Positions 29,157 through 64,000 of a stretch of 64,000 nucleotides of DNA are shown in pieces (the first letter of the stretch is position 1; each line of letters opens with the position of its first letter). The DNA comes from Haliotis cracherodii (lineage: Eukaryota), in assembly GCF_022045235.1 (NCBI RefSeq), contig NW_027266275.1, forward strand, positions 11,408,001 through 11,472,000, read 5' to 3'. Made by a program: the position numbers and the translations under genes. The notes beneath the pieces were generated by a model that was given only the letters and a program-made list of their open reading frames with translations, ran no database searches and had not been told where the DNA came from.

Positions 29157-30805
29157 CTATGTAAGGATAAATGTCTTGATTTCCCTTTTACAAGTAACAA
29201 GAACTGAGTCATGTTTGTCAATGCAGAGACTCAATGGCTGGTTGATGCCATCCTTTGATGTGAGGACATCGCTGACATATTCCCCTGTCTCGCTTAGTTG
29301 TATCATCGTCTCGGCGTCGTTGTCTACAAACATGATATCTCCTTTTTTGGTGGTTGAGATACCAGCAGGAATACTGAGAGCTTTGGCTCCGGTAGGGGCG
29401 TATCTCCAAACAACATCCCCATCTGACGTCACACATGTCACAGACTTCTTCGCCCAGTCAGACACGAGAATGTTGCCCTTGTTGTTGACACACATATAGG
29501 CCGGGTAGGTAAACAGTGTCTCATTGTTGTGTGTAGTGACTGACCTAAGCACGTTTCCTGCCATGTCAAGGATATCAACACAGGCGCTACCACCTGCTGC
29601 CAGAGATGAAGGACTCAGAACAGCGAGACTGTAGTACATCGTGCGTGTTGTGATGGTTGCGAGCAGCACCAGGTCAGGGGTCACTTCTACTGTTACAATA
29701 TGGCGGGATGCAGGGACAACAACCATCACCTGCTTCTCCTTCAACTGCGTTACTCCCCATGGAGAGACATCCAGGGTGAGTCTACTTTGACATGCTTGAT
29801 TGTTTCTCGTGAAGAAAGATTTTACACACATGTTGGTGTAGTCTGTAACAACAATTGTCTGCATCCCATCTACATTAAGTTCTGTGATGCCAGGCATACT
29901 AGGTACCCCCTGGTCATCCTCTGGGGTCGCATCAAGTGTGTGGAACAACACAGGTGAACACTTCAGACGAGGTCCATCTCGATATCTGACGTCAATCTTC
30001 CCCAGCTGTAGGTCATCTAGGATGTGCTGGACGTTGTCAGTGTCAGGTGTAAACCTGATGTCATCTATTCTCCGTGTGTCTGCTGTGTCTGTGTCCCTGA
30101 CGTCCCCCAACTCTACAGCACCCGACTCCCAGGCCTGATATGCGTCATACAGGTCCATCTCACAGTCCGATACCAAGGCCTGGTCAATGAACTCACAATG
30201 TTGTCTGTACATCTGCATCTCAATCTCTTCAAGCTTTACATCAGCTTCGGTCTGAATGATGTGTCTTTCTGTTATTTCATCTAATTCATCTAACAGCTTC
30301 TGTTCCTTCTGTCTGATGTACTCTATGGCCTTATGAGTTATACGATTAACCTGCTCTTTTGCTGCCACTTTGTCGTCTTTAATTTTATTTATTTCGAATT
30401 TATGTCTCTCTATTCTATTGCTTTTGCCATGACATTTTGTCCGAAAGATGTCACTTCGCAAAGTTAACTCCGATTTCATTCTTGCCACTTGTGAATTGAT
30501 TGTGACGACATACTCACATTTCCTGTGGTAGACCACACAGCAGGACTGACACAGTGACTTGTTACAGTCTTTACAGATATATTTGACTTGCTCATCCTTG
30601 TGTTCTTGACACATGACCTTTCGTCTCTTCATCACCTTGATATCTCCAGACAGGTCACACAGTACGTGATCACGAGATGAGGGACAAGCACGATGCATCT
30701 TGACACACCTTTCACAGAGAGTAACTTCACAGTCTGGACACCAGGAGATCGCTGGAGTTGTCTCCCCTAGCTGGCCACATAATGTGCAACATTTAGCACC
30801 TGTGT
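29157..30805 (-). CDS. TRIM-NHL gene A1, coding exon 2 (B-box1, B-box2, coiled coil, six NHL blades; no filamin domain)
   Basis: Acceptor ttctttTACAG|AC fits phase 1. CTLC..WCPDC..LCERC..H and CQEH..CKDC..LCQSC..HRKC B-boxes, coiled coil, NHL repeats (YPAYMCVNNKGNILVSD), TAG at 29157. Confidence 0.92.
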
Positions 30806-31463
30806 CTGTAAAAGAAACAATTGGGCATAATTTCTACACATATATGAATGTAAATAGAAAAACCTTCATCTGGAATTCGATCTCACTTTCACAGAACTTA
30901 GAAGTACATCAACCATATAAAATGTGGTTGTACCTAGCGTGAGGGAACAAACGAGGCTTATCAGTGTTAGCCATTATTGGTAGTCCAATAGATATCGTTA
31001 CTTGGCGTGGGGACCCGTGAAGATCCAGGGTAGCATAATAGGTCCTAACCCAGGCTTGTCGTAAGAGGTGACTAAGGGGATCTGGTGGTCAGACTTGCTG
31101 ATTAGCTTGATGCATGTCATTGCATCCCAATTGCGTGGATTGATGCTCATGATATCACTCACTGGATTGTGTGGTACAGACTCGATTAATTACAGACCGT
31201 CGTCATACAGCTGGAATATTGCTGAGTGTGGCGTTAAACAGCAAAAACAAACCCCCAAATGGACGTGGGAAAACATGAAGACTTGCGTACGCAGTTAGTG
31301 ATGACAATACCAATAACATGTATCTAACATAGTAACTGTATTTTCATTCTTTAACAAATACATCCATATAACACATGTACACAAAAGCTAAAACAAGAAC
31401 GATGTTGTTGCATTGTGGAGTTCGCATCCTTAAAACTTATGTTAAATTGCGGGTGTGTCTAAC

Positions 31464-31645
31464 CTTCAAAAATATTTTCTGCTTGTGTGTCAATCAGCCC
31501 CTGTATAATGATGCTGGGTTTGACCTGCCCCTCCCGCTCCTCCCTGGCCTGCTGGGGTCGGGGACCTTGGTATCTTGTCGACAAAAGACACAGGGGATTG
31601 TCTTGGACCGAACAGCATGTGGTCTGGTTTGGATGTAAGCAGTGT
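31464..31645 (-). pseudogene. Decayed 3' half of an A3-type RING exon inside the A1 intron
   Basis: Reads YIQTRPHAVRSKTIPCVFCRQDTKVPDPSRP-(1-nt deletion)-EEREGQVKPSIIIQGLIDTQAENIFE, then G|GTTAGACACACCC, like the A3 donor G|GTAAGACACACCC. Confidence 0.85.
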
Positions 31646-31833
31646 ATGCCTTTGCATGTGTTTGTGTCGGGTGCCACCGGTGCGGCTCACCTTTTCGCGA
31701 ACACCTGGTATCATCACTATGTAATGGTAATTCATAAACTCATGCTCACGATATAGCCAGAATCGTACAATCGACTGTGTTTTCGGCAGAGATTCCTTAT
31801 GTATATGGAAAGGATTTTGTTGCTTGCATTTAC

Positions 31834-32131
31834 CTTCAGTAGAAGGTCGAGCTTGTGTGTCAATCAGCCCCTGTATAATGATGCTGGGTTTGATCTGCCC
31901 CGCCCACTCCTTCACTGGCCGGCTGGGATTGGGGGCCTTGGTATCTTGTCGACAGCAGGGACAGGGGATCGTCTTGGACTGTACAGCATCTGGTCTGATT
32001 TGGATGTATCCTGTGACACATTTCCTGCAGAATGTGTGATCACACCTCAGTGTACAGGGGTCTGTGTACAGCTCCTGGCAGATCACACAGTTGAGAAATT
32101 CCGTCACTTTCTCAGCTCGTGACGTCGCCAT
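31834..32131 (-). CDS. TRIM-NHL gene A1, coding exon 1 (C3HC4 RING); joins 29157-30805 to give 648 aa
   Basis: MATSRAEKVTEFLNCVICQELYTDPCTLRCDHTFCRKC...CPCCRQ. Acceptor ttttacag|ATG, donor GAAG|GTAAAT, 298 nt, phase 1. Confidence 0.9.
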
Positions 32132-33049
32132 CTGTAAAACAAAACATGACAATATGAGATCTGGCAGAATCACTTTTTACATTTTCAGGAGATCCTTTAG
32201 TTGCTCAGCTCGAAATATAACAATGACAATTAAAAGCTAATACGATTTTAGCATTTAACTCTCGATTTATTTGGAAACATTTATTTACAGATTAATATTG
32301 TACACCTAAAATAACAGTATAAAACTCCTGGAAGTATGGTGTGAGAGTTTCCAGTAGAAAACCATGAAGGGAGATACACTGTACACGTATGTACATAGCT
32401 GCTGCTGAAACATTAACATACTTGCACCGTGTGTTTAAAATTGATAACCAGTACCTATGCAAGATAGGTGTACACACAAAGTGTACCTAAATAGAGAAAT
32501 TGATAGCAGTGTATATTGTTGTAGAGACGGTAGAGACGGTGTTGCGCTGCTTATATCACATTCCAGCCATTATTCCAATTAGAGGAGGCGCCGAAATGGC
32601 CATCCAGGTAGTGTATGTGTGGACTACATTGTTTCAACAGAACGTCCAATTATTGTTAAAAGCTACATATTAAATCTTGCCAACACAGTCCAATGTCCCT
32701 GAGTAACAGACAATGCTCGCACTGTCACGATACAAGGGAGGTAACTGTGAAGGTTAGTGTCGGGGGCAAAGATACATGCTTTTATTGCGGCAATATTTCA
32801 TGAAGGACGAACAACTTCGTTCACCTGAAATAATAAACTAAAATGTGTTAGACAGCTGTAAAACTAACTCAAAACAGTAAGACAGTTAAACAGTAAGACA
32901 TAAAGTGTATGAACATACTTTGTGTCTCAGAATACGAAACAGAATCTCGCTCTACAAGTCCTTTTGTCGGTTTCTTTAAGTATAAAGGGTCATGAATGAG
33001 CTTGTTCACAAGACAAAATAAGTATTTAAAACACAAACCGTATACAAGT

Positions 33050-33320
33050 TGATACTGTATGTTGCTAGTTGACGAATTTAATAATCCTTTATCATGTGCA
33101 CTGTCAGCTTCAATTTATTTCCTTGAAGTCTTGAAATAACCAACTCCTGCAGAGATACACACCTGTGTCCACCTGCCGCTTTCGCATAACATACAAGGGA
33201 GGTAACTGCAAAACCTCGACTTGCGGTGATTGGTAAAGTATCAGTGCTGATGACCACGTAGGTCCTTGGATCGAATCAGGGCCGATTGCCATAGGCGGGT
33301 GCGATATCGACACATTGCAA
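33050..33320 (-). promoter_or_regulatory. Conserved upstream block, candidate promoter or non-coding exon 1 of the TRIM genes (homologs 39190-39470, 44810-45080, 51000-51280, 60560-60830)
   Basis: Every ATG is directly preceded by a splice acceptor, so a non-coding exon is expected upstream. This block (CTT(C/T)CG..ACAAGGGAGG(T/C)AACT) is conserved across A and B types. Confidence 0.45.
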
Positions 33321-34150
33321 TATTTAAGAAATAAACGACGAGTCGGTGTTGTTTGTCATACAATAAATACTGCAAGGAGAAAAAATAAACGAGGGATTAT
33401 GTCGTTTATTCCTGGTATATTCTCTCTGCATTGTTTCATGCTGTAGATTGTCACCAAATGACTTCTTTCACTTCAGGCCCAGGGCCCTTTGCATACATGT
33501 ATGTTTGTGTTAGAACGCTTTATAATCCTGTAGTGTGATTAGGGTTGAGGGACGAACACACATATTTATAGTAATTATGTTTGTCAACTGATTAGAATTG
33601 ATTAATAATTTTAATACGTTTAATCATGCTCCCTATTGCAAAAAACGTTGTGTGAAAGGACGTGTCTGGATATGTATTTCAACGGTGAAGTATAGGTTAA
33701 GTAATTTTCTTATTAAAACAGTTCACCACATTCACTATATCGGAAAGGAATAGTTAAAACACTGTTCGGTTTCTTCAGATTTACTGTCCATATTTCTATA
33801 TACATCTTGCATCTTATATTATTGGTAGTGGCGCTCGGTATGTTGTGTAAGCAGTTTTCAAATCACTGAAGCATAAACAAGGGCTGCACCTTGTACAGTT
33901 AACCTCCTGCATTCAATAATATATTCGGAGGTCTATATATTAATGTGTTTTCTTCCCAAGTTGTAGGTCATCTAGGATTTTACAGCGCTCTAATCCCTAT
34001 TGCAGTTATATCATGATGAGTCAGCTTGATGTGGAGTGTAAACACAAAGTGAAGCAGGTCTTAGACGTTTACCGTGGTGATGCCAAACAAAGTTAGATGA
34101 TCTGAGAGGTGAGGACTTCAACATGTCATTAGTCCATTCTGTTCTCCCTA

Positions 34151-34415
34151 GGGGGCACGGGTGGCCCAGTCGTCTAAGGCGCCGCGATTCGCTGTGCAGA
34201 GTTGCGTCCCTTGGGTACGCCAGAAACCTATGATTGTGGGTTCGAATCCCGGTTCGCTCCGATTATGTTTCTAGGTTTGTCAGTACCATACCCGTGCTCG
34301 TGGGTAAACGTCTGACACCTGCATCACTTGGGGCTTTCCTCCCACATTACGCTGACACGCCGTGATATAACTGGAATACTGTTAAAAGCGGCGTTAAACC
34401 CAACTCACTCACTCA
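34151..34415 (+). mobile_element. SINE family 2 copy (duplicated at 45919-46181; absent at the homologous site near 62310)
   Basis: 12-bp TSD ctgttctcccta. Confidence 0.88.
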
Positions 34416-35076
34416 CTGTTCTCCCTAAATTGTGAGATGAGATGAAATGGGGTTAAACGTCGCGTCCACGATCATTGCACTACATAGCGAAGTGCGTGCA
34501 CGTATGTGTGTGTGTGGGGCTGCTTGAATGTACTAGTCTGGACTAATGTCGATTTCATAGTGCTATCTCACTGAGGTACCATGCTGCATTCCACTCCAAC
34601 ACCCCACTCCAACACAGCCTATTGACTCCGAGCCAACTGTCATATCTTTAGCCCCTAAAAGTAGAGCGTCAGGCAGGGTAACATCAAGTACCATCTTTTC
34701 ACGTCTTTTGGCAGGACCCCGGACCTTCCGCTCTCTTAGCAGTCGCTCTACCACTAGACCACGGAGGCGGTTCTCCCTATTTGGCCTGAGCTACCTACTT
34801 GTATATGTCAGTAGAACAGTTCTCGTTTTGTATCCATCTGATGAAGTGGTAAATCGTTTTGGGGCAGATATCTTAGATTGGTATTCGTTTTATATTAACT
34901 GGATTACAGCAGAAGTCCAACACCGCCATTGTGGACACCTTCAACTGTGCCGTAAATACATGTGTCCTGTAGAACAAATTGACAAAACGTGTAGCCATCC
35001 TAACACAGCACTGCAACAGCAATTGATGTACACCAACTATCACATACAAGTGGTTAAGTGATTTCCATGATTCAGA

Positions 35077-35258
35077 GGGGCAGTAGGATAGCCTAGTGGT
35101 TAAACCGTTCTCTCGTCAGACCGAAGACCCGGGTTCGATTGCCGACATGGGTACAATGTGTGAAGCCAATTTCTGGTGTCCCCCGCCTTGATATTGCTGG
35201 AATATTGCTTAAAGCGGCGTAAACCATACTCACTCATTCACTGACTGACTCACTCACT
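35077..35258 (+). mobile_element. SINE family 1 copy (same insertion duplicated at 46862-47044 and 62937-63115)
   Basis: A/B boxes; TSD tccatgattc(a/t)ga present in all three units. Confidence 0.85.
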
Positions 35259-35836
35259 CCATGATTCTGATACCTGTACAAGTGGATCTGGTGTTGATTT
35301 CACAATCCCTATGCTTTCATCTGTCTACAAGAACATCTCTAAATATATATGAATCAAAACTGACAAACACAACAGCAAATTATTGATAGGAAATGTAAAC
35401 ATTTAATACTCATCATATATTTAATATATTATCTCAAATCTTACATGTAAACATGAGCTTCGCATGACAGAAATCCACTCACAGTAATGATTTCAGCTTC
35501 GAAAATGAATTGATAATTGCAAAATATTTTATTGTTACAAGTGATTTGGGCCTAATGCCCATGAGAGGCTGTTTCCTGGCTCGGAGAAGGGACGCAACTC
35601 TTCACAGCACACAGGAATGCCTCCTACCACTTGGTCACCCGTGTCTACTCTTATTCGTTTGCCGTTCAAGTTCCATATGGTGTCATGCAGGCCGCCCATA
35701 TGCAGCTGAGACATGACAATGTGCATCTTAATACATGTTGTCCTTCCCCGTCATCCCCTCCCTTTCATCCTTACACATCATCCCGAGATGTGAGAACTCA
35801 CTCCGACAAACCCCTTCATCGATATACATTCACATA

Positions 35837-37479
35837 CTATGTGAAAACAAATGTCTTGATTTCCCCTCCACCAGTTACAAGAACTGAGTCATGTTTGTCA
35901 ATGCACAGACTAATTGGCTGATTGATGCCATCCTGAGATGTGAGGACATCGCTGACATATTCCCCTGTCTCGGTTAGCTGTATAATAGTCACGGCGATCT
36001 TGTCTACAAACATGATATCTCCTGTGTTGGTTGTTAAGATACCAGTAGGCTTTCTGAGTGCTCTATCTCCGGTAGGGGCGTATCTCCACACGACATCCCC
36101 ATCTGAAGTCAAACATGTGACAGACTTCTTGCAGCAGTCAGACACGAGTATGTTGCCCTTGTTGTTGACACACATATAGGCGGGGTAGGCAAAGAGTGTC
36201 TCGTTGTTGTGTGTAGTGACTGACCTCAGCACTTGTCCTGTCATGTCCAGGATATCAAGACAGTCCCAAGTACCTGCTGCCAGAGATGAAGGACCCAGAA
36301 CAGCGAGACTGGCGTAGCCCTTGCTTGTTGTGATGGTTGAGTTCAGTACCAGGTCTTGGGACACCTCTACTGTTAGAATCTTTCGTGAGCCAGGGACAGC
36401 AACTATCACCTCTTTATCCGTCAACCGTGTTAGGCCAAATGGAGAGTCATCCAGGGGAAGTTTACTTTGAGATGGTTGATCGTTTCTGTTGTAGAAAGAT
36501 TTCACACACTTGTTGGTGTAGTCCGTAACAACAATTGTCTGTATGCCATCTACATAAAGTGCTGTGACACCAGGCATTCTAGGTATCCCTTCGTCATCCT
36601 CTGAGGTCGCATCAAGTGTGTGGAACAACACTGGTGAACACTTCAGTCCATCTCCATATGTGACGTCAATCTCCCCCAGCTGTAGGTCATCTAGGATGTG
36701 CTGGACGTTGTCAGTGTCAGGTGTAAACCTGATGTCATCTATTCTGTGTGTGTCTGCTGTGTCTGTGTCCCTGACGTCCCCCAACTCTACAGCACCCGAT
36801 TCCCAGGCCTGATACGCTTCATACAGGTCCATCTCACAGTCCGATACCAAGGCCTGGTCAATGAACTCACAATGTTGTCTGTACATCTGCATCTCAATCT
36901 CTTCAAGCTTTACATCAGCATGAGTCTGAATGACTTGTTTGTCTGTTATTTCATCCACTTCATCCAACAGCTTTTGTTCCTTCAGCCTGATGTGCTGTAT
37001 CATTTTATTGGCGTAAAGATGGATTTGTTCTTTAGTGGCCAATTTCTTTTCTTTTATTTGATCTAATCTCAACGTATGTCTCTCTATCCTTTTACCTTTG
37101 CCATGATATTTAGTCTGCAAGATATTTCTTTTCATAGTCAACTGTGACTTCATTCTTTCTACTTGTGAATTGATTGTGACGACAGAGTCACATTTCCTGT
37201 GGTAGACCACGCAGCATGACTGACACAGTGACTTGTTACAGTCTTTACAGATATATTTGACTTTCTTGTGCTTGTGCTCTTGACACATGATCTTGCGTCT
37301 CTGTTTAACCTTTACCTCCCCAGACAGGTCGCATAGTTCATGGTCACGAGATAAGGGACTAGCACGATGAATCTTGACACATCTTCCACAGAGGTTAACT
37401 TCACAGTCCGGACACCAGAAGGTCCCTGGAGTTGTCTCCCCTAGCTGCCCACATAACGTGCAGCACTTTGTAGTAGTGT
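35837..37479 (-). CDS. TRIM-NHL gene B1, coding exon 2 (B-box1/2, coiled coil, NHL propeller)
   Basis: Acceptor ttcattctCAG|AC; uninterrupted frame to TAG; paralog of A1 exon 2. Confidence 0.92.
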
Positions 37480-37619
37480 CTGAGAATGAAAATAACATCT
37501 TTTTGACAACGTGTCCATAAACCTATACATAAAAACAAATTGCACAATGACTTTTATATACAATTATATTTTTTAATGCATACATACATTTTCTGGCGCT
37601 AAACGTAACTCATTGATAA

Positions 37620-38000
37620 TATCTTTGTAAAATCTGGCGGTTAAACATTTCAGCAAGAGGTAGGCATGCCCATGGTACCAATTGTTTGCTCAGAAGTTGA
37701 TCAAGGTTACAACATTCAAGGCCTTAATAAAGCTTTCAAAAGGTGTTGAAAAAGATATGTGGAGGACATTTCCCAATTTGATTTGACTTATGTTGCCATG
37801 TTTTTTCATTTGAACAATTAACTTGCCTTTGCATGTGTTTGTGTCGGGTGCCACCGGTGCGGCTCACCTTTTCGCGAACACCTGGTATCATCACTATGTA
37901 ATGGTGATTCATAAACACATGCTGATGATATAGACGGAATCGTACAATCGACTCTGCTTTTGGCAGAGATTCCTAATGAATATGGAAAGGGTTTTGTCGC
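37620..38000 (+). mobile_element. PLE-like RT end and 3' UTR relic filling most of the B1 intron, antisense to the gene (also 49410-49800; shorter pieces 31648-31825 and 43407-43585)
   Basis: AQKL..QGYNIQGLNKAFKR translation plus the ctcaccttttcgcgaacacctggtatcatc motif. Confidence 0.7.
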
Positions 38001-38010
38001 TTGTATTTAC

Positions 38011-38308
38011 CTTCAGCAGAAGGTCCAGCTTGTGTGTCAATCAGCCCCTGTATAATGATGCTGGGTTTGATCTGCCCCGCCCACTCCTCCACTGGCCTGC
38101 TAGGGTCGGGGACCTTGGTATCTTGTCGACAGCAGGGACAGGGGATCGTCTTGGACTGTACAGCATCTGGTCTCGTTTGGATGTATCCTGTGACACATTT
38201 CCTGCAGAATGTGTGATCACACCTCAGTGTACAAGGGTCTTTGTACAGTTCCTGGCAGATCACACAGGTGAGGAATTCCATCACTTTTTCAGCCCGCGAC
38301 GTCGCCAT
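38011..38308 (-). CDS. TRIM-NHL gene B1, coding exon 1 (RING); joins 35837-37479 to give 646 aa
   Basis: Same 298-nt RING exon, cag|ATG start, GAAG|GTAAAT donor. Confidence 0.9.
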
Positions 38309-41300
38309 CTGTAAAACAGGACATGATAGTATGAGATCACTGTCACAATCAAGATCACTCTTCAGGACATCTTTCAGTTAGATGAATAAGTGATACTTTG
38401 TTTCTTATTTAATTTTTAAATTTAAGCATGTGAAAGAAAGTTTTTAACGTTATTTCGCATTTAACTGATGATTATATTGGGACATTTTTACTTAATGATT
38501 GATATGTTGTACTTAAAATACATTTAGAAACTACTGAATGCTGTGAGAATTTTCAAAATCATACCTTGAAGAAAAATAACTGCAGGTGAAGCATATATCT
38601 TACATACTGGCACTGTTGATTTAAAATTGATTACCAATTACGTGTGCAACATGAACACAAAGGTAAGGGTACACAAAACAGAGAATTGACATAGGGAATA
38701 TCACTGTAGTTATCACAGTAGAGGGCACTTGACATGGTCAGGCTGGGAGTGTATGTAAAGACTTATGTAGGTTTGGCAGTGTCGGCATTGCTTCAAATTA
38801 TTTCTAACAGCTATATTTTAAAACATACCCACATCGTCCTGTATGAGGGACTATTGATCCATCTCTATGTGCCTGGTTTATATACACGCCCCCTCAATGT
38901 CACAGTACAAGGAAGGAAATTGTGTAGGTCAGTGTGTCGGGGTCAAAGTTTAATGTTTTTTTATTTTTTTCAGTATTCATATCGACGAAGGACTTGGTTT
39001 ACCTGAATTGATACACACAGACTTTTGTAACTAACGTATAACAGCAGAAGTAAGATAAATGTAAGATACAAGGCGTTTCAGGATACGAAACGCGATCTTT
39101 CTCTACAAGTCATACTTTCAGTTTCTCTGACATTAGTTTTAAGTTCCCTGACTGTGTGTGTTCACAACACAAACTCAATATTTACGAAATACAAACCGTA
39201 TACAAGTTGATTGTGTCTGATGCTAGTAGATGAATAGATACTTCTTCATCATATGGATCCTGTTGGCTTTGCTTAGAATCCCGGAAACCTTGAAATAACA
39301 CCTCCCGTCGAGGTAGGCAGTTGTGTCTATCTGACTCTTCCGTATGACGTACAAGGGAGGCAACTACGAAACCTCGACAAGTGGTGACTGGGCAGAGCTG
39401 ACGACAACGTAGTTTCCCGGATCCAATCTAGTATGACGGACATAGCCAGGCGAGATGTCCACACACCTCAAGGTACATACTTATTGTACTTATTATATAT
39501 AGTGTAGTTGTAAAGTCCTATCGTGTCAAAAACATTTGTTTTAGCACAAGGACACGTGCCGATGTTTTGTCCTATCTTTAAGTATAGAAAGCAAAGTGAC
39601 TTGTTGGTGAGTGAGCGTTTTGGCCACATGAAGAGCAAATTATCAAAGACAGTTTCCCCATGTTTCCACACCGGCTTCATCCAACGTTTTCATTAAAAGA
39701 TAATACTATCTAGGATATTTACTATCATCAATACACAAAAGCTTAAATCAATGTTCAACACATTTAAAATGATAATCTACATACAGTTGTCTTCTACTAC
39801 ATTTTGCTAAAATAGCACTTCTAGAAACATATTTACTTACCCCCAACACATATTTACAGAGATTAGCACAAAACGATTCTAATACTTGGTATTGCTGAAA
39901 ACACCACACCTCTACCCCATACAATATAATAGGCTATATTTTAGTGTCAAGCAGTTCAAATAAAATAGTTACAGGCATCAGTGGGAATTTATATCATAAC
40001 ATTGATATGAAACAAAGCTGATAATCAATGTGTCTATGCACTTTGACCAGGACAATCGATTATAATGCAGAACACCTGTGTAATTGCTGTAAGTACATGT
40101 CACTGTTTTTGGAACGTCACTCATAAACCATTTTTATAATGCCTTAGTGTATCCTCAGGTCTGAATACGATTACTTCTGTTTTATGCAAATTAACCTGTA
40201 GTCCCAATTTTTCACAAAAGCTGTCAGGAACGTTAACTTTTTTTGGTAGCCCCAAAACACTATCATCAATCAAGCATAAATAAAGTACAATCGAGCATGC
40301 TCCTTCCGACAAGATTTCGGGATGTGACACTTGAAAAGTTGTTTGATCACGGTTACAACATTCAAGTCTTCAGTAAAGCTTTCAAAACGTTATATGGTAG
40401 ATATTTGGATAACATCAGCATCAGTAACAAGAAATCAACGTTATCAATATCCACTGCCATGGGGCACATGTTTGTTCATGTAGAAGTGAATATAAACTAA
40501 AAAAAAAGAGTCCTATAAAGCCTTAAGAAGAGTTTTGCACGTGCACTAGGGTCACTTTATGAAAAAATAATTAAACGTGAAATTAATACATACAAAATAA
40601 TTTAAAGCACAAATTCTCGAACAAAATCTAAAAACATGTAGCAAGGGAAGTAACTCTGGCAAAATATCATTTACGGGACCACTTTTTTTGACAAGTATCT
40701 ATCACATAAGTATGGAAACTTTCACTCGTGTAACTTAAGGAGTTTCTGGGAAAACCCATTTCCCGCAGTTTGCACTAGATTGAAAAGCATGGAGCAAGGG
40801 CTTTAACTTCCATTATGCGAACTCATTAAAGATCAGTGCGTAAAATGTTATTTCTCTAACTTAAATCGATTAAGAGAGAATTTGTCCCCTTTGTGAAGCG
40901 GACGGAAGGACGGAAATACGATGGAACGGACGGAAGGACGCACGAACTCCGTTTCCTTATCCCCGTCTTACTTAGTGGCGGGGGATAAAAATAATGTTCG
41001 ATGCAATGCCCTATTTAGATTTCTACCAGTTCCCGCGTTTTTCAGTTGAAACATTTGACATTTGCTCGTGCTTGTGACGGCTGCCACCGATGGGGCACGA
41101 TACGCTTATCTGTTCGCGAGCAATTGGTATCATCCCAATAGTAACGGTGATTCATGGAAGCATACTCATAATATAGTCGGAATCGTACACTATTAATCGA
41201 CTCTACTTTTGACAGAGATTTCTTATGAATGTGGAAAGGGTTTTGTCACATTTTATCTTTAGACATAAGAATGTGCATCCTTTTACAATGAACTATTATT

Positions 41301-41386
41301 CTCACTGCACATTTTCACCCTCACACGCCACCCAGAGACGAAAGAACTAAATCTGACGAACCCTTCCATCAATATTCACTCCCATA

Positions 41387-43029
41387 CTATGTAAGGATAA
41401 ATGTTTTGATTTCCCTTCCACAAGTAACAAGAACTGAGTCATGTTTGTTAATGCAGAGACTCAATGGCTGGCTGATGCCATCCTGTGATGTGATAACATC
41501 GCTGACATATTCCCCTGTCTCGCTTAGTAGTATAATAGCCTCGGTCAGCTGGTCTATAAGCATGATATCTCCAGTGTTGGTTGTAAAGATACCAGAAGGT
41601 TGATGGTGTGCCCTATCTCCGGTAGACGGGTATCTCCACACGGCTTTCCCCTCTGACGTAAAACATGTCACAGACTTCTTCTTCCAATCAGACACGAGTA
41701 TGTTGCCCTTGGTGTTAACACTCATGTAGGACGGGAAGGCAAACAGTGTCTCCTTGTTGTGTGTAGTGACTGACCTCAGCACGTGTCCCGCCATGTCCAT
41801 GATATCAACACATGTTATACTACCTGCTGCCAGGGATGTAGGACTCAGAACAGAGAGACTGGAGTACTTCTTTCTTGTTGTTATTGTCGAGAGCAGCACC
41901 AGGTCAGGGGTCACTTCTACTGTTACAATCTGACTGGAGCCAGGGACAGCAACCATCACCTGGTTCTCCTTCAACTGTGTTACACCACGTGGAGAGTTAT
42001 CCAGGGGAAGTCTACTTTGACATGCTTGATTGTTTCTCGTGAAGAAAGATTTCACACATTTGTTGGTGTTGTCTGTAACAACAATTGTCTGCATCCCATC
42101 TACATTAAGTTCTGTGACGCCAGTGATAAAAGGTATCTCCTCGTCATTCAATGAGGTCGCATCAAGTGTGTGGAACAACACTGGTGAACACTTCAGGCCA
42201 TTTCCATATGTGACGTCAATCTCCCCAAGCTGTAGGTCATCTAGGATGTGCTGGACGTTGTCAATGTCAGGTGTAAACCTGATTTCATCTATTCTCCGTG
42301 TGTCTGCTGTGTTTGTGTCCCTGACATCCCCCAACTCTACAGCTCCCGACTCCCAGGCCTGATACGCGTCATACAGGTCCATCTCACAGTCCGATACCAA
42401 GGCCTGGTCAATGAACTGACAATGTTGTCTGTACATCTGCATCTCAATCTCGTCAAGCTTTACATCAGCATGAGTCTGAATGATGTGTTTTTCTGTTATT
42501 TCATCTAATTCATCTAACAGCTTCTTTTCCTTCTGTCGGATGTACTCTATGGCCTTATGAGCTATCAGATTAACCTGCTCTTTTACTGCAACTTTGTCGT
42601 CTTTCATGTTATCTATTTTGAATTGATGTCTCTCTATTCTATTTCGTTTGCCATGACATTTTGTCCGTAAGATGTCACTTCGCAATGCTAACTCTGATTT
42701 CATTCTTGCCACTTGTGAATTGATTGTGACGATAGACTCACATTTCCTGTGGTAGACCACACAGCAGGACTGACACAGTGACTTGTTGCAGTCTTTACAG
42801 AGATATTTGACATGCTCATCCTTGTAATCTTGACACATGACCTTTCGTCTCTTCATCACCTTGATATCTCCAGACAGGTCACACAGTTCGTGGTCACGAG
42901 ATGAGGGACTAACCCGATGCATTTTGACACACCTTTCACAGAGAGTAACTTCACAGTCTGAACACCAGGAGATCGCTGGAGTTGTCTCCCCTAGCTGTCC
43001 ACATAATGTGCAACATTTAGCACCTGTGT
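41387..43029 (-). CDS. TRIM-NHL gene A2, coding exon 2
   Basis: Acceptor TACAG|AC; intact frame; B-box2 reads CQDY instead of CQEH. Confidence 0.91.
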
Positions 43030-43222
43030 CTGTAAAAGAAACAATTGGGCATAATTTGTACAAATATATGAATGTAAATACAAACACCATCATTGCATGT
43101 TATTCGTACATGATACTACATACAATCTGGAATTCGAACACAAAAGCTAAAACAAGTACGATGTTGTTGCATTGTGGAGTTCGCATCCTTAAAACTTCTA
43201 TTAAATTGCGTGTGTGTCTAAC

Positions 43223-43404
43223 CTTCAAAAATATTTTCTGCTTCTGTGTCAATCAGCCCCTGTATAATGATGCTGGGTTTGACCTGCCCCTCCCGCTCCT
43301 CCCTGGCCTGCTGGGGTCGGGGACCTTGGTATCTTGTCGACAAAAGACACAGGGGATTGTCTTGGACCGAACAGCATGTGGTCTGGTTTGGATGTAAGCA
43401 GTGT
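43223..43404 (-). pseudogene. Decayed 3' half of an A3-type RING exon inside the A2 intron
   Basis: Near-identical to the 31464-31645 relic. Confidence 0.85.
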
Positions 43405-43592
43405 ATGCCTTTGCATGTGTTTGTGTCGGGTGCCACCGGTGCGGCTCACCTTTTCGCGAACACCTGATATCATCACTATGTAATGGTAATTCATAAACTC
43501 ATGCTCATGATATAGGCAGAATCGTACAATCGACTGTGTTTTCGGCAGAGATTCCTTATGTATATTGGAAGGATTTTGTTGCTTGCATTTAC

Positions 43593-43890
43593 CTTCAGCA
43601 GAAGGTCCAGCTTGTGTGTCAATCAGCCCCTGTATAATGATGCTGGGTTTGATCTGCCCTGCCCACTCCTCCACTGGCCGGCTGTGATGGGGGGCCTTGG
43701 TATCTTGTCGACAGCAGGGACAGGGGATCCTCTTGGACTGTACAGCATATGGTCTGATTTGGATGTATCCTGTGACACATTTCCTGCAGAATGTGTGATC
43801 ACACCTCAGTGTACAGGGGTCTGTGTACAGCTCCTGGCAGATCACACAGGTGAGAAATTCCGTCACTTTCTCAGCTCGTGACGTCGCCAT
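43593..43890 (-). CDS. TRIM-NHL gene A2, coding exon 1 (RING); joins 41387-43029 to give 646 aa
   Basis: 298-nt RING exon with the same splice sites as A1. Confidence 0.9.
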
Positions 43891-46800: not shown

Positions 46801-47614
46801 ACAACAATGGATGTACACCAACTATCACATACAAGTGGTTAAGTGATTTCCATGATTCAGAGGGGCGGTCGGGTAGCCTAGTGGTTAAAGCGTTCTCTCG
46901 TCACGCCGCAGGCCCGGGTTCGATTGCCGACATGGGTACGATGTGTGAAGCCAATTTCTGGTGTCCCCCGCCTTGATATTGCTGGAATATTTCTATTTAA
47001 AAGCGGCGTAAAACCAGACTCACTCATTCATTCACTCACTCACTCCATGATTCAGATACATGTAAAGTGGATTTCGTCTACATTTGACAATCCATATGCT
47101 ATTATCTGTCTACAAGAACGTCTCTAAATATATATGAATCAAAACGAAAAAACACAACAGCAAATTATTGATAGGAAATGTAAACATTTAATTTTCCTCA
47201 TATATTTAATATATTATCTCAACTCTTACATGTAAACATGACCTTCGAATAACAGAAACCCTCCCACAGTAATGATTTAAGCTTCGAAAATGAATTGATA
47301 ATTGCAAAACATTAGTGATTAGGGCCTTATGCCCATGGGAAACTGTTTCCTGGCTCGGAGAAGGGACGCAACTCTTCACAGCAAACAGTAATGCTTCCTA
47401 CCATTTGGTCGATCACTCGTGTCTACTCTTATTCGTATGTCGTTCAAGTTCCATATGGTTTCACGCAGGCCGCCCATATGTAGCTGAGACATAACAATGT
47501 GCATCTTGATACATGTTGTTCTCCCCCGTCATCCCCTCGCTTTCATCCTTACACATCATCCCGAGATGAGAGAACTCAATCCGACAAAGCCCTTCATCGA
47601 TATACATTCACATA

Positions 47615-49257
47615 CTATGTGAAGACAAATGTCTTGATTTCCCCTCCACCAGTTACAAGAACAGAGTCATGTTTGTCAATGCACAGACTAATTGGCTGAT
47701 TGATGCCATCCTGAGATGTGAGGACATCGCTGACATATTCCCCTGTCTCGGTTAGCTGTATAATAGTCACGGCGATCTTGTCTACAAACATGATATCTCC
47801 TGTGTTGGTTGTTAAGATACCAGTAGGCTTACGGAGAGCCTTATCTCCGGTAGGGGCGTATCTCCACACAACATCCCCATCTGACGTCAAACATGTGACA
47901 GACTTCTTGCAGCAGTCAGACACGAGTATGTTGCCCTTGTTGTTAACACACATATAGGCGGGGTAGGCAAACAGTGTCTCGTTGTTGTGTGTAGCGACTG
48001 ACCTCAGCACTTGTCCTGTCATGTCCAGGATATCAAGACAGTCCCAAGTACCTGCTGCCAGAGATGAAGGACCCAGAACAGCGAGACTGGCGTAGCCCTT
48101 GCTTGTTGTGATGGTTGAGTTCAGTACAAGGTCCGGGAACACCTCTACTGTTAGAATCTTCTGTGAGCCAGGGACAGCAACTATCACCTCTTTCTCTGTC
48201 AACCGTGTTAGGCCAAATGGAGAGTCATCCAGGGGAAGTCTACTTTGACATGGTTGATCGTTTCTGTTGTAGAAAGATTTCACACACTTGTTGGTGTAGT
48301 CTGTAACAACAATTGTCTGTATGCCATCTACATAAAGTGCTGTGACACCAGGCATTCTAGGTATCCCTTCGTCATCCTCTGAGGTCGCATCAAGTGTGTG
48401 GGACAACACTGGTGAACACTTCAGTCCATCTCCATATGTGACGTCAATCTCCCCCAGCTGTAGGTCATCTAGGATGTGCTGGACGTTGTCAGTGTCAGGT
48501 GTGAACCTGATGTCATCTATTCTCCGTGTGTCTGCTGTGTCTGTGTCCCTGACATCCCCCAACTCTACAGCTCCCGACTCCCAGGCCTGATACGCTTCAT
48601 ACAGGTCCATCTCACAGTCCGATACCAAGGCCTGGTCAATGAATTCACAATGTTGTCTGTACATCTGCATCTCAATCTCTTCAAGCTTTACATCAGCATG
48701 AGTCTGAATGACTTGTTTGTCTGTTATTTCATCCACTTCATCCAACAGCTTTTGTTCCTTCAGCCTGATGTGCTGTATCATTTTATTGGCGTAAAGATGG
48801 ATTTGTTCTTTAGTGGCCAATTTATTGTCTTTTATTTGATCTAATTTCAACGTATGTCTCTCTGTCCTTTTACCTTTGCCATGATATTTAGTCTGCAAGA
48901 TATTTCTTTTCAGAGTCAACTCTGACTTCATGTTTTCTACTTGTGAATTGATTGTGACGACAGAGTCACATTTCCTGTGGTAGACCACGCAGCATGACTG
49001 ACACAGTGACTTGTTACAGTCTTTACAGATATATTTGACTTTCTTTTGCTTGTGCTCTTGACACATGATCTTGCGTCTCTGCTTAACCTTTACCTCCCCA
49101 GACAGGTCGCATAGTTCATGGTCACGAGATAAGGGACTAGCACGATGAATCTTGACACATCTTCCACAGAGGTTAACTTCACAGTCCGGACACCAGAAGG
49201 TCCCTGGAGTTGTCTCCCCTAGCTGCCCACATAACGTGCAGCACCTGGTAGTAATGT
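47615..49257 (-). CDS. TRIM-NHL gene B2, coding exon 2
   Basis: Acceptor ttgttctCAG|AC; intact frame; nearly identical to B1. Confidence 0.92.
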
Positions 49258-49809
49258 CTGAGAACAAAAATGAAAATGAATGGAAATATTTTTGACAACG
49301 TGTACATACATAAACCTATACATAAAATAACATATTGCACAATGACTTGTATATATAATTATATTTTTAAATGCACACATACATTTTCTGGCGCTGAACG
49401 TAACTCATTGATAATATCTTTGTAAAATTTGGCGGTAAGACATTTCAGCAAGAGGTACGCATGCCCATGGTACCAATTGTTTGCTCAGAAGTTGTTTGAT
49501 CAAGGTTACGACATTCAAGGCCTCAATAAAGCTTTCAAATAGTGTTGCAGTAGATATGTGGAGGACATTTCCCAATTTGATTTGACTTATGTTGCCATGT
49601 TTTATCATTTGAACAATTAACTTGCCTTTGCATGTGTTTGTGTCGGGTGCCACCGGTGCGGCTCACCTTTTCGCGAACACCTGGTATCATCACAATGTAA
49701 TGGTGATTCATAAACACACGCTGGTGATATAGTCGGAATCGTACAATCGACTCTGTTTTTGGCAGAGATTCCTTATGAATATGGAAAGGGTTTTGTCGCT
49801 TGAATTTAC

Positions 49810-50107
49810 CTTCAGTAGAAGGTCCAGCTTGTGTGTCAATCAGCCCCTGTATAATGATGCTGGGTTTGATCTGCCCCGCCCACTCCTCCACTGGTCGGCT
49901 GGGGTGGGGGACCTTGGTATCTTGTCGACAGCAGGGACAGGGGATCGTCTTGGACTGTACAGCATCTGGTCTCGTTTGGATGTATCCTGTGACACATTTC
50001 CTGCAGAATGTGTGATCACACCTCAGTGTACAGGGGTCTGTGTATAGTTCCTGGCAGATCACACAGGTGAGGAATTCCATCACTTTTTCAGCCCGCGACG
50101 TCGCCAT
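49810..50107 (-). CDS. TRIM-NHL gene B2, coding exon 1 (RING); joins 47615-49257 to give 646 aa
   Basis: 298-nt RING exon, cag|ATG, GAAG|GTAAAT. Confidence 0.9.
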
Positions 50108-54759: not shown

Positions 54760-54800
54760 GAACACAACGTTTCGGAGTATATGCTTACTCCTTCATCAGG
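54760..54800 (-). ncRNA. Minimal hammerhead ribozyme motif (PLE pLTR type)
   Basis: CTGATGA-A-GGAGTA-agcata-TACTCC-GAAACGTTG: intact core, perfect 6-bp stem II, palindromic AACGTT in place of stem III. Confidence 0.65.
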
Positions 54801-57683: not shown

Positions 57684-59332
57684 CTATATAAGAATAAATG
57701 TTTTGATTTCCCTTCCACAAGTAACAAGAACTGAGTCATATTTGTTAATGCAGAGACTCAATGGCTGGCTCATGCCATCCTGTGATGTGATGACATCGCT
57801 GACATATTCCCCTGTCTCGCTTAGTTGTATAATAGCCTCGGCCAGCTGGTCTATAAACATGACATCTCCAGTGTTGGTTGTAAAGATACCAGAAGGCTGA
57901 TGGAGTGCCATATCTCCCGTGGGGGCGTATCTCCACACGACGTCCCCATCTGACGTCAAACATGTCACAGACTTCTTCTTCCAATCAGACACGAGTATGT
58001 TGCCCTTGGTGTTAACACTCATGTAGGACGGTAAGGTAAACAGTGTCTCCTTGTTGTGTGTAGTGACTGACCTCAGCACGTGTCCCCCCATGTCCAGGAT
58101 ATCAACACCGCCCCAACCACCTGCTGCTAGAGAAGAAGGACTCAGAACAGCGAGACTGTAGTACCCCTTGCTTGTTGTGATGGTTGAGAGCAGCACCAGG
58201 TCAGGGGTCACTTCTACTGTTACAATATGACGGGATGCGGGGACAGCAACCATCACCTGCTTCTCCTTCAACTGTGTAACACCCCATGGAGAGTCATCCA
58301 GGGTGAGTCTACTTTGACATGATCGATTGTTTCTCGTGAAGAAAGATTTCACACACGTGTTGGTGTAGTCTGTAACAACAATTGTCTGCATCCCATCTAC
58401 ATTAAGTTCTCTGACGCCAGGCATACCAGGTATCCCCTCGTCATCCTCTGAGGTCGCATCAAGTGTATGGAACAACACTGGTGAACACTTCAGACCAGGT
58501 CCATCTCCATATCTCAGGTCAATCTTCCCCAGCTGTAGGTCATCTAGGATGTGCTGGACGTTGTCAGTGTCAGGTGTAAACCTGATGTCATCTATTCTGT
58601 GTGTGTCTGCTGTGTCTGTGTCCCTGACATCCCCCAACTCTACAGCCCCCGACTCCCAGGCCTGATACGCGTCATACAGGTCCATCTCACAGTCCGATAT
58701 CAAGACCTGGTCAATGAACTCACAATGTTGTTTGTACATCTGCATCTCAATCTCGTCAAGCTTTACATCAGCATGAGTCTGAATGATATGTTTTTCTGTT
58801 ATTTCATTTAATTCATCTAACAACTTATTTTCCTTCTGTCGGATGTACTCTATGGCCTTATTGGCTATAAGATTAACCTGCTCTCTTACTGCCACTTTGT
58901 CGTCTTTAATTTTATCTATTTTGAATTGATGTCTCTCTATTCTATTGCCTTTGCTGTCACATTTTGTCCGTAAGATGTCACATCGCAAAGCTAATTCCGA
59001 TTTCATTCTTGCCACTTGTGAATTGATTGTGACGACAGACTCACATTTCCTGTGGTAGACCACACAGCAGGACTGACACAGTGTCATGTTGCAGTCTTTA
59101 CAGAGATATTTGACTTGCTCATCCTTGTGTTCTTGACACATGACCTTTCGTCTCTTCATCACCTTGATATCTCCAGACAGGTCACACGGTACGTGGTCAC
59201 GAGATGAGGGACTAGCACGATGCATCTTGACACACCTTTCACAGAGAGTAACTTCACAGTCTGGACACCAGGAGATCGCTGGAGTTGTCTCCCCTAGCTG
59301 GTCACATAATGTGCAACATTTAGCACCTGTGT
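57684..59332 (-). CDS. TRIM-NHL gene A3, coding exon 2
   Basis: Acceptor ttccttcaCAG|AC; intact frame to TAG. Confidence 0.92.
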
Positions 59333-59866: not shown

Positions 59867-60164
59867 CTTCAGTAGTAGCTCCAGCTTGTGTGTCAATCAG
59901 CCCCTGTATAATGATGCTGGGCTTGATCTGCCCTGCCCACTCCTCCACAGGCCGGCTGGGGTGGGGAACCCTGGTATATTGTCGACAGAAGGCACAGGGG
60001 ATCGTCTTGGACTGTACAGCATCTGGTCTGGTTTGGATGTATTCAGTGACACATTTCCTGCAAAATGTGTGATCACACCTCAGTGTACAAGGGTCTGTGT
60101 ACAGTTCCTGGCAGATCACACAGGTGAGGAATTCCATCACTGTCTCGGCCTGTGACGTCGCCAT
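59867..60164 (-). CDS. TRIM-NHL gene A3, coding exon 1 (RING, CAFCRQ variant); joins 57684-59332 to give 648 aa
   Basis: 298-nt exon, cag|ATG, donor GAAG|GTAAGA. Confidence 0.9.
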
Positions 60165-63100: not shown

Positions 63101-63195
63101 TCTCACTCACTCACTCCATGATTCAGACACATGTACAAGTGGATCTGGTGTTCATTTGAAATCTTTGTGCTATTATCTGTCTACAAGAAAATGAA

Positions 63196-63261
<66 letters not shown>

Positions 63262-63729
63262 TCAAAACTGACAAACACAACAGCAAATTATTGATAGAAA
63301 TGTAAACATTTAATACCCATCACATATTTAAAATATCATCTCAACTCTTACATGTAAACATGACCTTCGCATAACAGTATTGATTTAAGCTTCGAAAATG
63401 AATTGATAATTGCAAAACATTTTATTGTTACAAGTGATTTGGGCCTTATACCCATGAGAAGCTGTTTCCTGGCTCGGAGAAGGAACGCAACTCTTCACAG
63501 CACACAGGAATGCTTCCTACCACTGGGCCAACCGTGTCTACGCTTATTTGTATGTCGTTCAAGTTCCATATGGTGTCACACAGGCCGCCCATATGCAGCT
63601 GAGACATAACAATGTGCATCTTAATACATGTTGTTCTCCCCCGTCATCCCCTCCCTTTCATCCTTACACATCATCCCGAGATGTGATAACTCAATCCGAC
63701 AATGCCCTTCATCAATATACATTCACATA

Positions 63730-64000
63730 CTATGTGAAAATAAATGTCTTGATTTCCCCGCCACCAGTTACAAGAACTGAGTCATGTTTGTCAATGCACA
63801 GACTAATTGGCTGATTGATGCCATCCTGTGATGTGAGGACATCGCTGACATATTCCCCTGTCTCGGTTAGCTGTATAATAGTCACGGCGATGTTGTCTAC
63901 AAACATGATATCTCCTGTGTTGGTTGTTAAGATACCAGTAGGTTTACGGAGAGCCCTATCTCCGGTAGAGGCGTATCTTCACACAACATCCCCATCTGAC
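63730..64000 (-). pseudogene. 3' end of TRIM-NHL gene B3 (runs off the window) with an in-frame premature TGA
   Basis: Near-identical to the B1/B2 C-terminus, but GDVV-TGA-RY at 63979-63981 where paralogs have TGG (Trp). Confidence 0.8.

What the first reader, a model, noticed from the sequence alone, without database searches (positions are those of the whole stretch)
29157..64000. Alternating A/B TRIM-NHL array: variable A propellers paired with near-invariant B genes (candidate sensor plus partner E3 system)
Seen: six filamin-less RING-BB-CC-NHL genes in strict A-B-A-B-A-B order. B1, B2 and the visible part of B3 differ by only a few NHL residues. A1/A2/A3 differ repeatedly at the same loop positions: PSMPG/PFITG/PGMPG, DYTNM/DNTNK/DYTNT, SPWG/SPRG/SPWG, RTMYYS/RKKYSS/SKGYYS, GGSAC/GSITC/GGWGG, TYPAY/AFPSY/TLPSY, SIPAG/HQPSG, DNDAE/DQLTE/DQLAE. 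The strands between them are conserved. Known: residues around xPxG and just after the strand-b Asp form the top face that binds RNA or protein in Brat, LIN-41/TRIM71 and TRIM32, and TRIM coiled coils dimerise. Inference: a diversifying innate-immune recognition locus, possibly variable A plus constant B heterodimers. A1 and A2 diverged far more than B1 and B2 although both pairs arose in the same 12-kb duplication.
Basis: partly seen in the sequence, partly recalled or inferred. Interest (0 to 1): 0.82.

Follow-up and report, generated by a model that had tools for sequence, protein, structure and literature searches.

The report
Abalone TRIM-NHL tandem array, mosaic paralogs
This stretch of the black abalone genome holds a tandem family of RING/B-box/coiled-coil/NHL ubiquitin-ligase genes that differ mainly on one face of their propeller and swap pieces by gene conversion, but nothing supports the proposed "variable sensor plus constant partner" pairing.

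Summary
The window is Haliotis cracherodii chromosome sequence. It holds five intact two-exon RING–B-box–B-box–coiled-coil–NHL genes (A1, B1, A2, B2, A3). "B3" is a 5'-truncated NHL fragment with an in-frame TGA. The quoted loop motifs are correct. They lie on the predicted top-face loops of the propeller (variable 37/73 codons there against 38/191 elsewhere, p=1.6e-6).

The key argument, that A diverged faster than B after one duplication, fails:
- A1–A2 silent divergence is also about 2.7 times that of B1–B2.
- A1's last blades are a tract 96–97% identical to a gene 75 kb away (p≤0.0005), and A2 and A4 are mosaics too.
- A3 and A4 have their own red-abalone orthologues with near-identical top loops.
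- B1/B2 are simply young duplicates.

Two of the four B-type copies are broken, and the alternation stops just outside the window. A and B differ most in the coiled coil. A:B pairing is therefore unsupported.

Top-loop ω is about 0.9. A site test gives a suggestive class with ω≈2 (p=0.0015, or 0.026 with finer partitions).

Best reading: a birth-and-death, gene-converting TRIM-NHL repertoire. The scan noted a similar array 740 kb away in this genome (s1-831982).

The parts
29157..30805 (-). A1 exon 2 (B-box1, B-box2, coiled coil, linker, NHL propeller; includes the stop codon)
   Evidence: ORF and splice acceptor. NCBI protein P0004 is 648 aa.
29160..29650 (-). G9-type conversion tract inside A1 (NHL blades 3-6). 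The 5' boundary is approximate.
   Evidence: In sliding windows this tract is 96-97% identical to G9 and 76-78% to A2. The max-chi2 breakpoint lies at alignment column 392-409, p<=0.0005. In the NHL2 segment tree A1 groups with G9/P0007 at 97/93 support.
31834..32131 (-). A1 exon 1 (RING, from the ATG to the GAAG|GT donor)
   Evidence: Pfam RING hits on the homologous exons of A2 and B2.
31481..31637 (-). Partial second copy of the RING exon inside the A1 intron. The same relic lies in A2 at 43240-43396 and in A4 beyond the window.
Evidence: tblastn and blastn.
35837..37479 (-). B1 exon 2
   Evidence: A spliced contig in run X2 joins 37479 to 38011.
38011..38308 (-). B1 exon 1 (RING)
39197..39235 (-). 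3' end of a non-coding 5' exon of B1. Its upstream limit is not determined. Homologous pieces lie at about 33003-33077 (A1) and 44762-44836 (A2).
   Evidence: Joint 38308->39197 with GT..AG ends on the minus strand in run X2; blastn.
41387..43029 (-). A2 exon 2
   Evidence: 100% match to NCBI P0001. A 484-nt contig with 1 mismatch lies across its 3' end in run X1.
43593..43890 (-). A2 exon 1 (RING)
47615..49257 (-). B2 exon 2
49810..50107 (-). B2 exon 1 (RING)
57684..59332 (-). A3 exon 2
   Evidence: NCBI P0003. The orthologue is H. rufescens P0005.
59867..60164 (-). A3 exon 1 (RING)
63733..64000 (-). psiB3: the 3' part of a B-type NHL exon. It runs to 64523 beyond the window, where it meets the 3' flank of A4. 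An in-frame TGA lies at 63979-63981.
31379..39630 (.). Young duplicated block holding A exon 1, the A-B spacer and the whole B gene. It pairs with 43138-51442 at 94.4% identity; sub-blocks range from 92% to 99%.
   Evidence: Self-blast; feature-wise and 500-bp identities.

Best explanation
The region is one end of a tandem array of at least 12 filamin-less TRIM-NHL E3-ligase genes and gene fragments in the black abalone. The array belongs to a family with hundreds of copies in this genome and evolves by birth and death plus patchy gene conversion.

A two-gene unit (A-type plus B-type) was copied at least twice. The older copy is A3/psiB3. The recent copy produced A1/B1 and A2/B2. That copying creates the A-B-A-B pattern.

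B1 and B2 look invariant because they are young duplicates under ordinary purifying selection. The A genes look variable because their NHL exons are older lineages and mosaics. A1 took blades 3-6 from a G9-type gene, A2 mixes A3- and A4-type tracts, and A4 ends B-like.

Paralogues differ mostly in the d-a and b-c loops of the propeller's top face. That is the surface used for RNA or protein binding in Brat, TRIM71 and other TRIM-NHL proteins. Each lineage keeps its own top face between abalone species.

Inferred, not shown: each paralogue is a homodimeric E3 ligase with its own target specificity, so the array is a repertoire of specificities, possibly for innate defence.
For: Gene models and domains. 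The NHL fold has pLDDT above 90 and 24 strands. The best Foldseek hits are the TRIM2/3 NHL domains (E 4e-15, TM 0.8).

Family size: 538 first-look candidates, 82 scored matches, with many clusters on C12, C2, C37 and C56.

Array continuation and broken copies.

Heterogeneous age of the 12-kb unit. Silent-site excess in A.

Mosaicism:
- sliding windows;
- max-chi2 triplets, p<=0.0005 for A1, A2, A3 and A4, and not significant for B1;
- discordant segment trees;
- dS between types of 1-2.8 in the coiled coil, against 0.08-0.25 in the linker and 0.24-0.5 in the NHL.

Top-face concentration and omega.

Orthologue stability: top loops differ at 7/208 positions against 22/434 in strands for orthologue pairs. 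In paralogue pairs the top loops are 4-5.5 times more likely to differ.

Transcription: a spliced B1 junction and an A2 3'-end contig in likely RNA runs.
Against: - The target and the biological role are unknown, and no immune induction was tested.
- The runs laid were only guessed to be RNA, and their contigs are short.
- The site-model test is my own implementation with fixed, scaled nucleotide-tree branch lengths. Residual recombination inflates such tests, and the signal drops to p=0.026 with seven partitions.
- Orthology with H. rufescens rests on protein trees only, because no DNA or synteny was available.
- The direction of conversion (A1 from G9 or the reverse) is not established.
Confidence: 0.75

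Rival explanations
1. One reading: the A genes are fast-diversifying sensors and the B genes a constant partner E3. The two act as A:B coiled-coil heterodimers in an innate-immune recognition locus.
For: A-B adjacency is repeated three times in the window. A-A differences concentrate on the top face. N:S is higher in A1-A2 than in B1-B2 (NHL OR 3.4, p=0.009). There are signs of transcription for both B1 and A2, in different runs.
Against: - psiB3 and G8 are broken B copies, and psiB3 sits between the intact genes A3 and A4.
- The alternation ends outside the window.
- Among the top hits to A2, which are the only H. rufescens proteins read here, none is an intact B-type protein. The H. rufescens A4 orthologue only carries a B-like C-terminus.
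- A and B have identical domain sets with intact RINGs, and all genes are head to tail.
- The coiled coil is the most diverged segment between A and B (dS 0.99, dN 0.24).
- The A top faces are stable between species.
- B invariance is explained by the young age of the duplicates (dS 0.06).
Confidence: 0.07
2. There is no adaptive diversification. The top-face loops are simply the least constrained part of the fold. Paralogue differences there are neutral drift, shuffled by conversion in a redundant, partly decaying gene family.
For: Top-loop omega is 0.90, not different from 1 (LRT 0.35). The pairwise confidence intervals span 1, and tract-restricted omega is 0.57. The M2a signal weakens with finer partitions. 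Pseudogenes are present in the array.
Against: - In orthologue pairs the top loops are not more variable than strands (7/208 against 22/434). A3's 62 comparable top-loop residues are identical in H. rufescens, so the loops are constrained within lineages.
- M2a is preferred over M1a in the NHL but not in the control region.
- Bottom loops are less variable than top loops.
Confidence: 0.2
3. Assembly artefact: the A1/B1 and A2/B2 units are divergent haplotypes of one locus that were placed in tandem.
For: Parts of the two units are 98-99% identical. Immune-type gene clusters are often structurally heterozygous in molluscs (general knowledge).
Against: Overall identity is 94%, falling to 84-90% in A exon 2. 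That is far above ordinary heterozygosity. The units have different intron lengths (1028 against 563 nt). NCBI annotates them as separate genes on a chromosome-scale contig.
Confidence: 0.03

Closest known systems
TRIM2/TRIM3 (class VII TRIM-NHL E3 ligases)
   Same: The order RING-B-box-coiled coil-NHL. The NHL model superposes best on the TRIM2/TRIM3 NHL crystal structures (E about 4e-15, TM about 0.8). NCBI names the genes 'TRIM2-like' and 'TRIM3-like'.
   Different: There is no filamin/Ig domain between the coiled coil and the NHL. Two B-box-like zinc modules are present. Only about 20% identity in the NHL. Hundreds of tandem copies, in place of one or two conserved neuronal genes.
Filamin-less TRIM-NHL proteins: TRIM32 / Drosophila Thin (Abba), Brat, Mei-P26
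   Same: The NHL follows the coiled coil directly. These structures are among the Foldseek hits (6xg7, 7nyq, 4zlr, 1q7f). In Brat the NHL domain is the RNA-binding domain (PMC4015489). That the RNA lies on the top face is from my own knowledge of the solved complexes, and it is the face that varies here.
   Different: Those are single-copy, deeply conserved developmental regulators. Here the top face differs from paralogue to paralogue. No RNA binding has been shown for these abalone proteins.
Diversified multigene TRIM families with B30.2/SPRY domains (primate TRIM5/TRIM22, teleost finTRIM)
   Same: This is what the array works like. Tandem arrays evolve by birth and death, the RBCC scaffold is conserved, and variation concentrates in surface loops of the C-terminal recognition domain with signs of positive selection (own knowledge of those families; for this locus).
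   Different: The recognition domain here is an NHL propeller, not B30.2. Antiviral function and induction are untested. Much of the variation is moved around as conversion tracts.
   Same: Adjacent genes of two types, repeated as a unit.
   Different: The orientation is head to tail. Both types have the same domains. The partner type is broken in two of its four copies. Pairing is not kept along the array.

Membership tests
TRIM (RBCC) family | N-terminal RING finger with C3HC4 zinc ligands | tested here: met
   zf-RING_UBOX and zf-C3HC4 score above the curated cut-offs on the exon 1 of A2 and B2. The Cys and His ligands are conserved in all five genes.
TRIM (RBCC) family | B-box zinc finger(s) after the RING | tested here: met
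   PF00643 and PF22586 score above cut-off in A2 and B2 exon 2. The zinc-ligand columns are invariant across 97 homologues.
TRIM (RBCC) family | Long coiled coil after the B-boxes | tested here: met
   The AF2 model has a continuous helix at residues 202-311, with block-mean pLDDT rising to about 90 over residues 230-280. Dimerisation itself was not tested.
TRIM-NHL subfamily | C-terminal six-bladed NHL beta-propeller | tested here: met
   Pfam NHL scores 29-31 bits against a cut-off of 20. The model has 24 strands with pLDDT above 90. Foldseek hits the TRIM2/3/71, Brat, Thin and Mei-P26 NHL domains.
Class VII TRIM (TRIM2/3/71 type) | Filamin/Ig domain between the coiled coil and the NHL | tested here: not met
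   No Pfam filamin hit. Residues 326-379 are a low-confidence linker without a folded domain.
TRIM-NHL subfamily | E3 ubiquitin-ligase activity; RNA or protein binding on the NHL top face | not testable with these tools
   Inferred from the domains only.
   psiB3 is truncated and carries a stop. G8 is a B-type copy with a TGA. After A4 the order is G7, G8, G9, G10, G11.
   Complex prediction was not run. Its controls (unrelated proteins) cannot separate A:B from A:A for paralogous coiled coils. The coiled coil is the most diverged A/B segment.
Diversifying multigene TRIM repertoire (TRIM5/finTRIM-like behaviour) | Positive selection focused on recognition-domain surface loops | tested here: inconclusive
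   Top-loop omega is 0.90. M2a over M1a gives p=0.0015 with 3 partitions and p=0.026 with 7. Five of the 7 best sites are in top loops, and the control region gives LRT 0. Tract-restricted omega is 0.57.
Diversifying multigene TRIM repertoire (TRIM5/finTRIM-like behaviour) | Induction by infection / restriction activity | not tested
   Only contig-level presence in likely RNA runs was seen.

The most novel reading that the evidence does not exclude
Abalone use the NHL propeller the way vertebrates use the B30.2 domain of TRIM5 or finTRIM. Hundreds of tandem TRIM-NHL genes would form a germline repertoire of intracellular recognition specificities. New top faces would be assembled by moving loop-bearing conversion tracts between neighbours and then frozen in each lineage. 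Anciently diverged coiled coils would keep each specificity as a separate homodimer.
Probability: 0.25. Interest if true: 0.65.

Novelty: new variant of a known kind. Interest (0 to 1): 0.4.

Why it matters
Black abalone collapsed from an infectious disease, and little is known about how gastropods recognise intracellular pathogens. If this NHL-based TRIM repertoire has paralogue-specific but species-stable binding faces, it offers candidates for such recognition. It would also be a parallel to the vertebrate TRIM5/finTRIM arrays built on a different fold. For the scan itself, the lesson is methodological. In tandem families, 'variable versus invariant neighbours' can come from the age of the duplicates and from conversion tracts. 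It needs silent-site and mosaic checks before it is read as selection.

Tried and rejected
No H. rufescens DNA or synteny could be fetched, so cross-species work used proteins only.
I did not reconstruct ancestors by other means. The planned per-branch counting of changes was replaced by likelihood models that sum over ancestors.
- Complex prediction was not run. I do not claim binding, and its unrelated-protein controls cannot separate A:B from A:A.
- The large representative protein search was not needed.
- Literature searches for a published account of TRIM-NHL expansion or selection in molluscs found only general mentions. Ten TRIM genes are among the OsHV-1 resistance candidates in oyster (PMC9437489). 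An Aplysia immunome study counts 22 TRIMs (PMC9334734). The black-abalone papers checked do not mention TRIM genes.
- The 'NPFHIHKESLPK' ORF continuation after exon 1 looked like a gene relic. It is a dispersed repeat that occurs in many places in the window.
- ORFs at 9180-9854 and 10068-10598 have no Pfam match.
Exons were searched by reference, and the AF2 job used the database protein P0001 with its homologues. Joined CDSs were used only inside scripts, for dN/dS.
Full report
**What is there.** The window is Haliotis cracherodii (black abalone), contig C12:11408001-11472000. Between 29 and 64 kb all genes lie on the minus strand.

Each gene has the following parts:
- a 298-nt exon that encodes the RING and ends GAAG|GTAA;
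- a phase-1 intron of 531-1028 nt;
- one large exon that starts after a CAG acceptor and encodes two B-box-type zinc modules, a long helix, a linker and the NHL repeats.

The joined models are open and give 648, 646, 646, 646 and 648 aa for A1, B1, A2, B2 and A3. These lengths equal those of the NCBI proteins for the species (P0004, P0006, P0001, P0003).

Pfam confirms RING, B-box and NHL and finds no filamin domain. An AF2 model of A2 built on 97 homologues has a 110-residue helix and a 24-strand propeller with pLDDT above 90. Its best structural matches are the NHL domains of TRIM2/3, Thin, TRIM71, Mei-P26 and Brat.

In likely RNA runs, one contig joins 37479 to 38011, which is exactly the B1 intron. 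Another joins 38308 to 39197, which indicates a 5' non-coding exon. A 484-nt contig with one mismatch covers the 3' end of A2. The runs are only guessed to be RNA and the contigs are short. I therefore take this as a sign of transcription and splicing, not as a measure of co-expression.

**Check of the observation.** The eight motif triplets are all correct. B1 and B2 differ at 9 of 264 NHL residues.

'B3' is not a gene. B-type homology ends sharply at 64523 in window numbering, where the 3' flank of another A-type gene (A4, 64996-66633) begins. Only exon-2 residues 283-546 remain. The part inside the window has TGG>TGA at 63979-63981.

Beyond A4 the array continues with G7, G8, G9, G10 and G11 (to about 124 kb in window numbering). 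G8 is a fourth B-type copy, 94-99% identical to B1 in 180-nt sliding windows, but with a TGA at the fifth codon of the aligned exon-2 frame. The alternation therefore reflects repeated copying of a two-gene unit. It is not a rule of the array.

The genome holds at least 538 first-look candidates of this exon type, in many clusters.

**Why A looks variable and B constant.** The two 12-kb units are not uniformly diverged:

| Segment | Identity between the two units |
|---|---|
| A exon 1 and the 2 kb upstream | 97-99% |
| B gene | 97.3% |
| B intron and upstream | 92-94% |
| Downstream of A | 89-93% |
| A exon 2 | 89.9% |
| NHL blades 3-5 within A exon 2 | 83.6% |

Synonymous divergence follows the same pattern. 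Exon-2 dS is 0.157 for A1-A2 and 0.060 for B1-B2 (OR 2.8, p=0.00014). In the NHL the values are 0.205 and 0.076. The A excess is therefore not only at the amino-acid level.

Sliding windows show that A1 is A-type up to about residue 390 of exon 2. After that it is 96-97% identical to G9, a gene 75 kb away, and only 76-78% identical to A2. A2 alternates between A3-like and A4-like tracts, and A4 ends B-like. Max-chi2 tests on triplets give p<=0.0005 for each of these. B1/B2/G8 gives no signal (p=0.20).

Segment trees agree. A1 sits in the A clade for the N-terminal part and the first blades, and with G9 and H. rufescens P0007 for the last blades (97/93).

Between types, dS is 1-2.8 in the coiled coil, 0.4-0.7 in the B-boxes, 0.08-0.25 in the linker and 0.24-0.5 in the NHL. 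The 3' half of the exon has therefore been exchanged repeatedly among array members. The coiled coil defines the types and is anciently diverged.

A3 pairs with H. rufescens P0005, A4 with P0002 and G9 with P0007, so these lineages predate the split of the two species. B1 and B2 are simply young.

**Is the top face diversifying?** I assigned the 24 DSSP strands to blades and labelled the d-a and b-c loops as top and the a-b and c-d loops as bottom.
- Among A1-A3, 37 of 73 top-loop codons vary, against 38 of 191 others (OR 4.1, p=1.6e-6). For the bottom loops the count is 11 of 37.
- Pairwise NG86 omega in top loops is 0.9-1.5, with bootstrap intervals that span 1. For strands it is 0.3-0.6.
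- When only the closest tracts are compared, so that old divergence imported by conversion is not counted, top-loop omega is 0.57 (CI 0.33-1.05).
- A fixed-class codon likelihood on nine intact genes with three recombination partitions gives omega 0.90 for top loops (not different from 1). It gives 0.54 for strands and 0.39 for bottom loops, both significantly below 1.
- A site mixture test prefers M2a over M1a in the NHL (LRT 12.97, p=0.0015). In it 16% of sites have omega 2.2, and 5 of the 7 sites with posterior above 0.8 are in top loops (A2 residues 400, 420, 504, 549, 575).
- With seven partitions the LRT falls to 7.3 (p=0.026). The B-box/coiled-coil/linker control gives LRT 0.

These are my own implementations with scaled nucleotide-tree branch lengths, and recombination inflates such tests. 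I therefore call the signal suggestive.

Against simple lack of constraint, top loops in orthologue pairs are not more variable than strands (7/208 against 22/434). A3's 62 comparable top-loop residues are identical in H. rufescens. In paralogue pairs the top loops are 4-5.5 times more likely to differ, and the contrast is significant (p=0.001-0.007). The pattern is divergence of the binding face between paralogues, followed by conservation within each lineage.

**The pairing hypothesis.**
- A and B have the same domains, including intact RING ligands, so no division of labour is visible.
- All genes are head to tail. Homologous pieces of the B1 5' exon lie upstream of A1 and A2, so each gene probably has its own 5' exon.
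- Two of the four B-type copies are broken, and one of them lies between two intact A genes.
- Among the top hits to A2, no H. rufescens protein is an intact B-type. This is weak evidence, because only annotated proteins were seen.
- The coiled coil is where A and B differ most (dN 0.24, dS about 1). That is what one expects if paralogues are kept apart as homodimers, although it proves nothing about binding.

I did not run the complex predictor, because its controls cannot distinguish A:B from A:A. I give the sensor-plus-partner reading about 7%.

**Comparison with what is known, and novelty.** By domains and fold these are TRIM-NHL proteins. They lack the filamin domain of TRIM2/3/71 and so resemble the TRIM32/Thin/Brat arrangement. 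In behaviour they resemble the multigene TRIM families with B30.2 domains (TRIM5, finTRIM): a constant RBCC scaffold, tandem turnover and variation on recognition-domain loops.

The papers I could search mention TRIM genes in mollusc immunity only in passing (PMC9437489, PMC9334734). None describes NHL top-face divergence or conversion mosaics. An earlier follow-up in this scan reported a similar array 740 kb away in the same genome (s1-831982). Another note on this window reported the intronic RING-exon relics (s1-843362), which I also see in A1, A2 and A4.

I class the finding as a new variant of a known kind, of moderate interest. The real features, a mosaic repertoire with species-stable and paralogue-specific top faces, are worth a targeted study.

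**Limits.** No expression levels were obtained, and no binding test was made.

Noticed in passing
window 31481-31637 and 43240-43396; also 67356-67529 in window numbering (L031): The introns of A1, A2 and A4 each hold a partial second copy (about 158 nt) of the RING exon. It is 91% identical to B1's exon 1, and the A1 copy's flank also aligns to the start of A3's intron. A1's intron also has a 465-nt insertion that A2 lacks.
   Followed up: partly
exon-2 residues about 181-262 of every array gene, e.g. window 42240-42490 in A2: The linker between the coiled coil and the NHL is kept nearly identical at the nucleotide level among paralogues that are saturated in the neighbouring coiled coil (dS 0.08-0.25 against 1-2.8). 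RNA-run contigs pile up there (depth 170-730). It may act as a shared homology anchor for exchange of NHL modules. Selection on the sequence itself is not excluded.
   Followed up: partly
window 37700-38010, with copies near 14.6, 18.0-18.5, 24.5, 41.1, 55.0 and 57.4 kb: A dispersed repeat of about 150-300 bp sits just downstream of the RING exon in the introns and at many other places. It creates the false ORF continuation 'NPFHIHKESLPK...' and the high contig depth seen there.
   Followed up: partly
window 24473-26550 vs 54954-56977: The far downstream flanks of A1 and A3 are 91-94% identical. A2's flank is cut at 39629 by the upstream region of B1. This marks the edge of the recent 12-kb duplication.
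   Followed up: no
L033/L036, window numbering 91254-92879 (G8): This is a B-type copy 43 kb from B2, 94-99% identical to B1 in sliding windows. It reads TGATGC where B1 has TGTGGG, which puts a TGA in B-box 1. It is either a very young pseudogene or is kept similar by conversion.
   Followed up: partly
H. rufescens proteins P0007, P0010, P0033: These three annotated proteins share an identical NHL half but have different N-terminal halves. They are either gene models chimeric across the conserved linker or real module sharing between neighbouring genes.
   Followed up: no
window 7889-9120; 19783-19999; 22528-23026: Satellite-like tandem repeats: a 45-bp unit (26 copies, with a 358-bp higher order), a 27/81-bp unit, and a 12-bp unit GTTACAAATAAT (42 copies). 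ORFs at 9180-9854 and 10068-10598 have no Pfam match.
   Followed up: no
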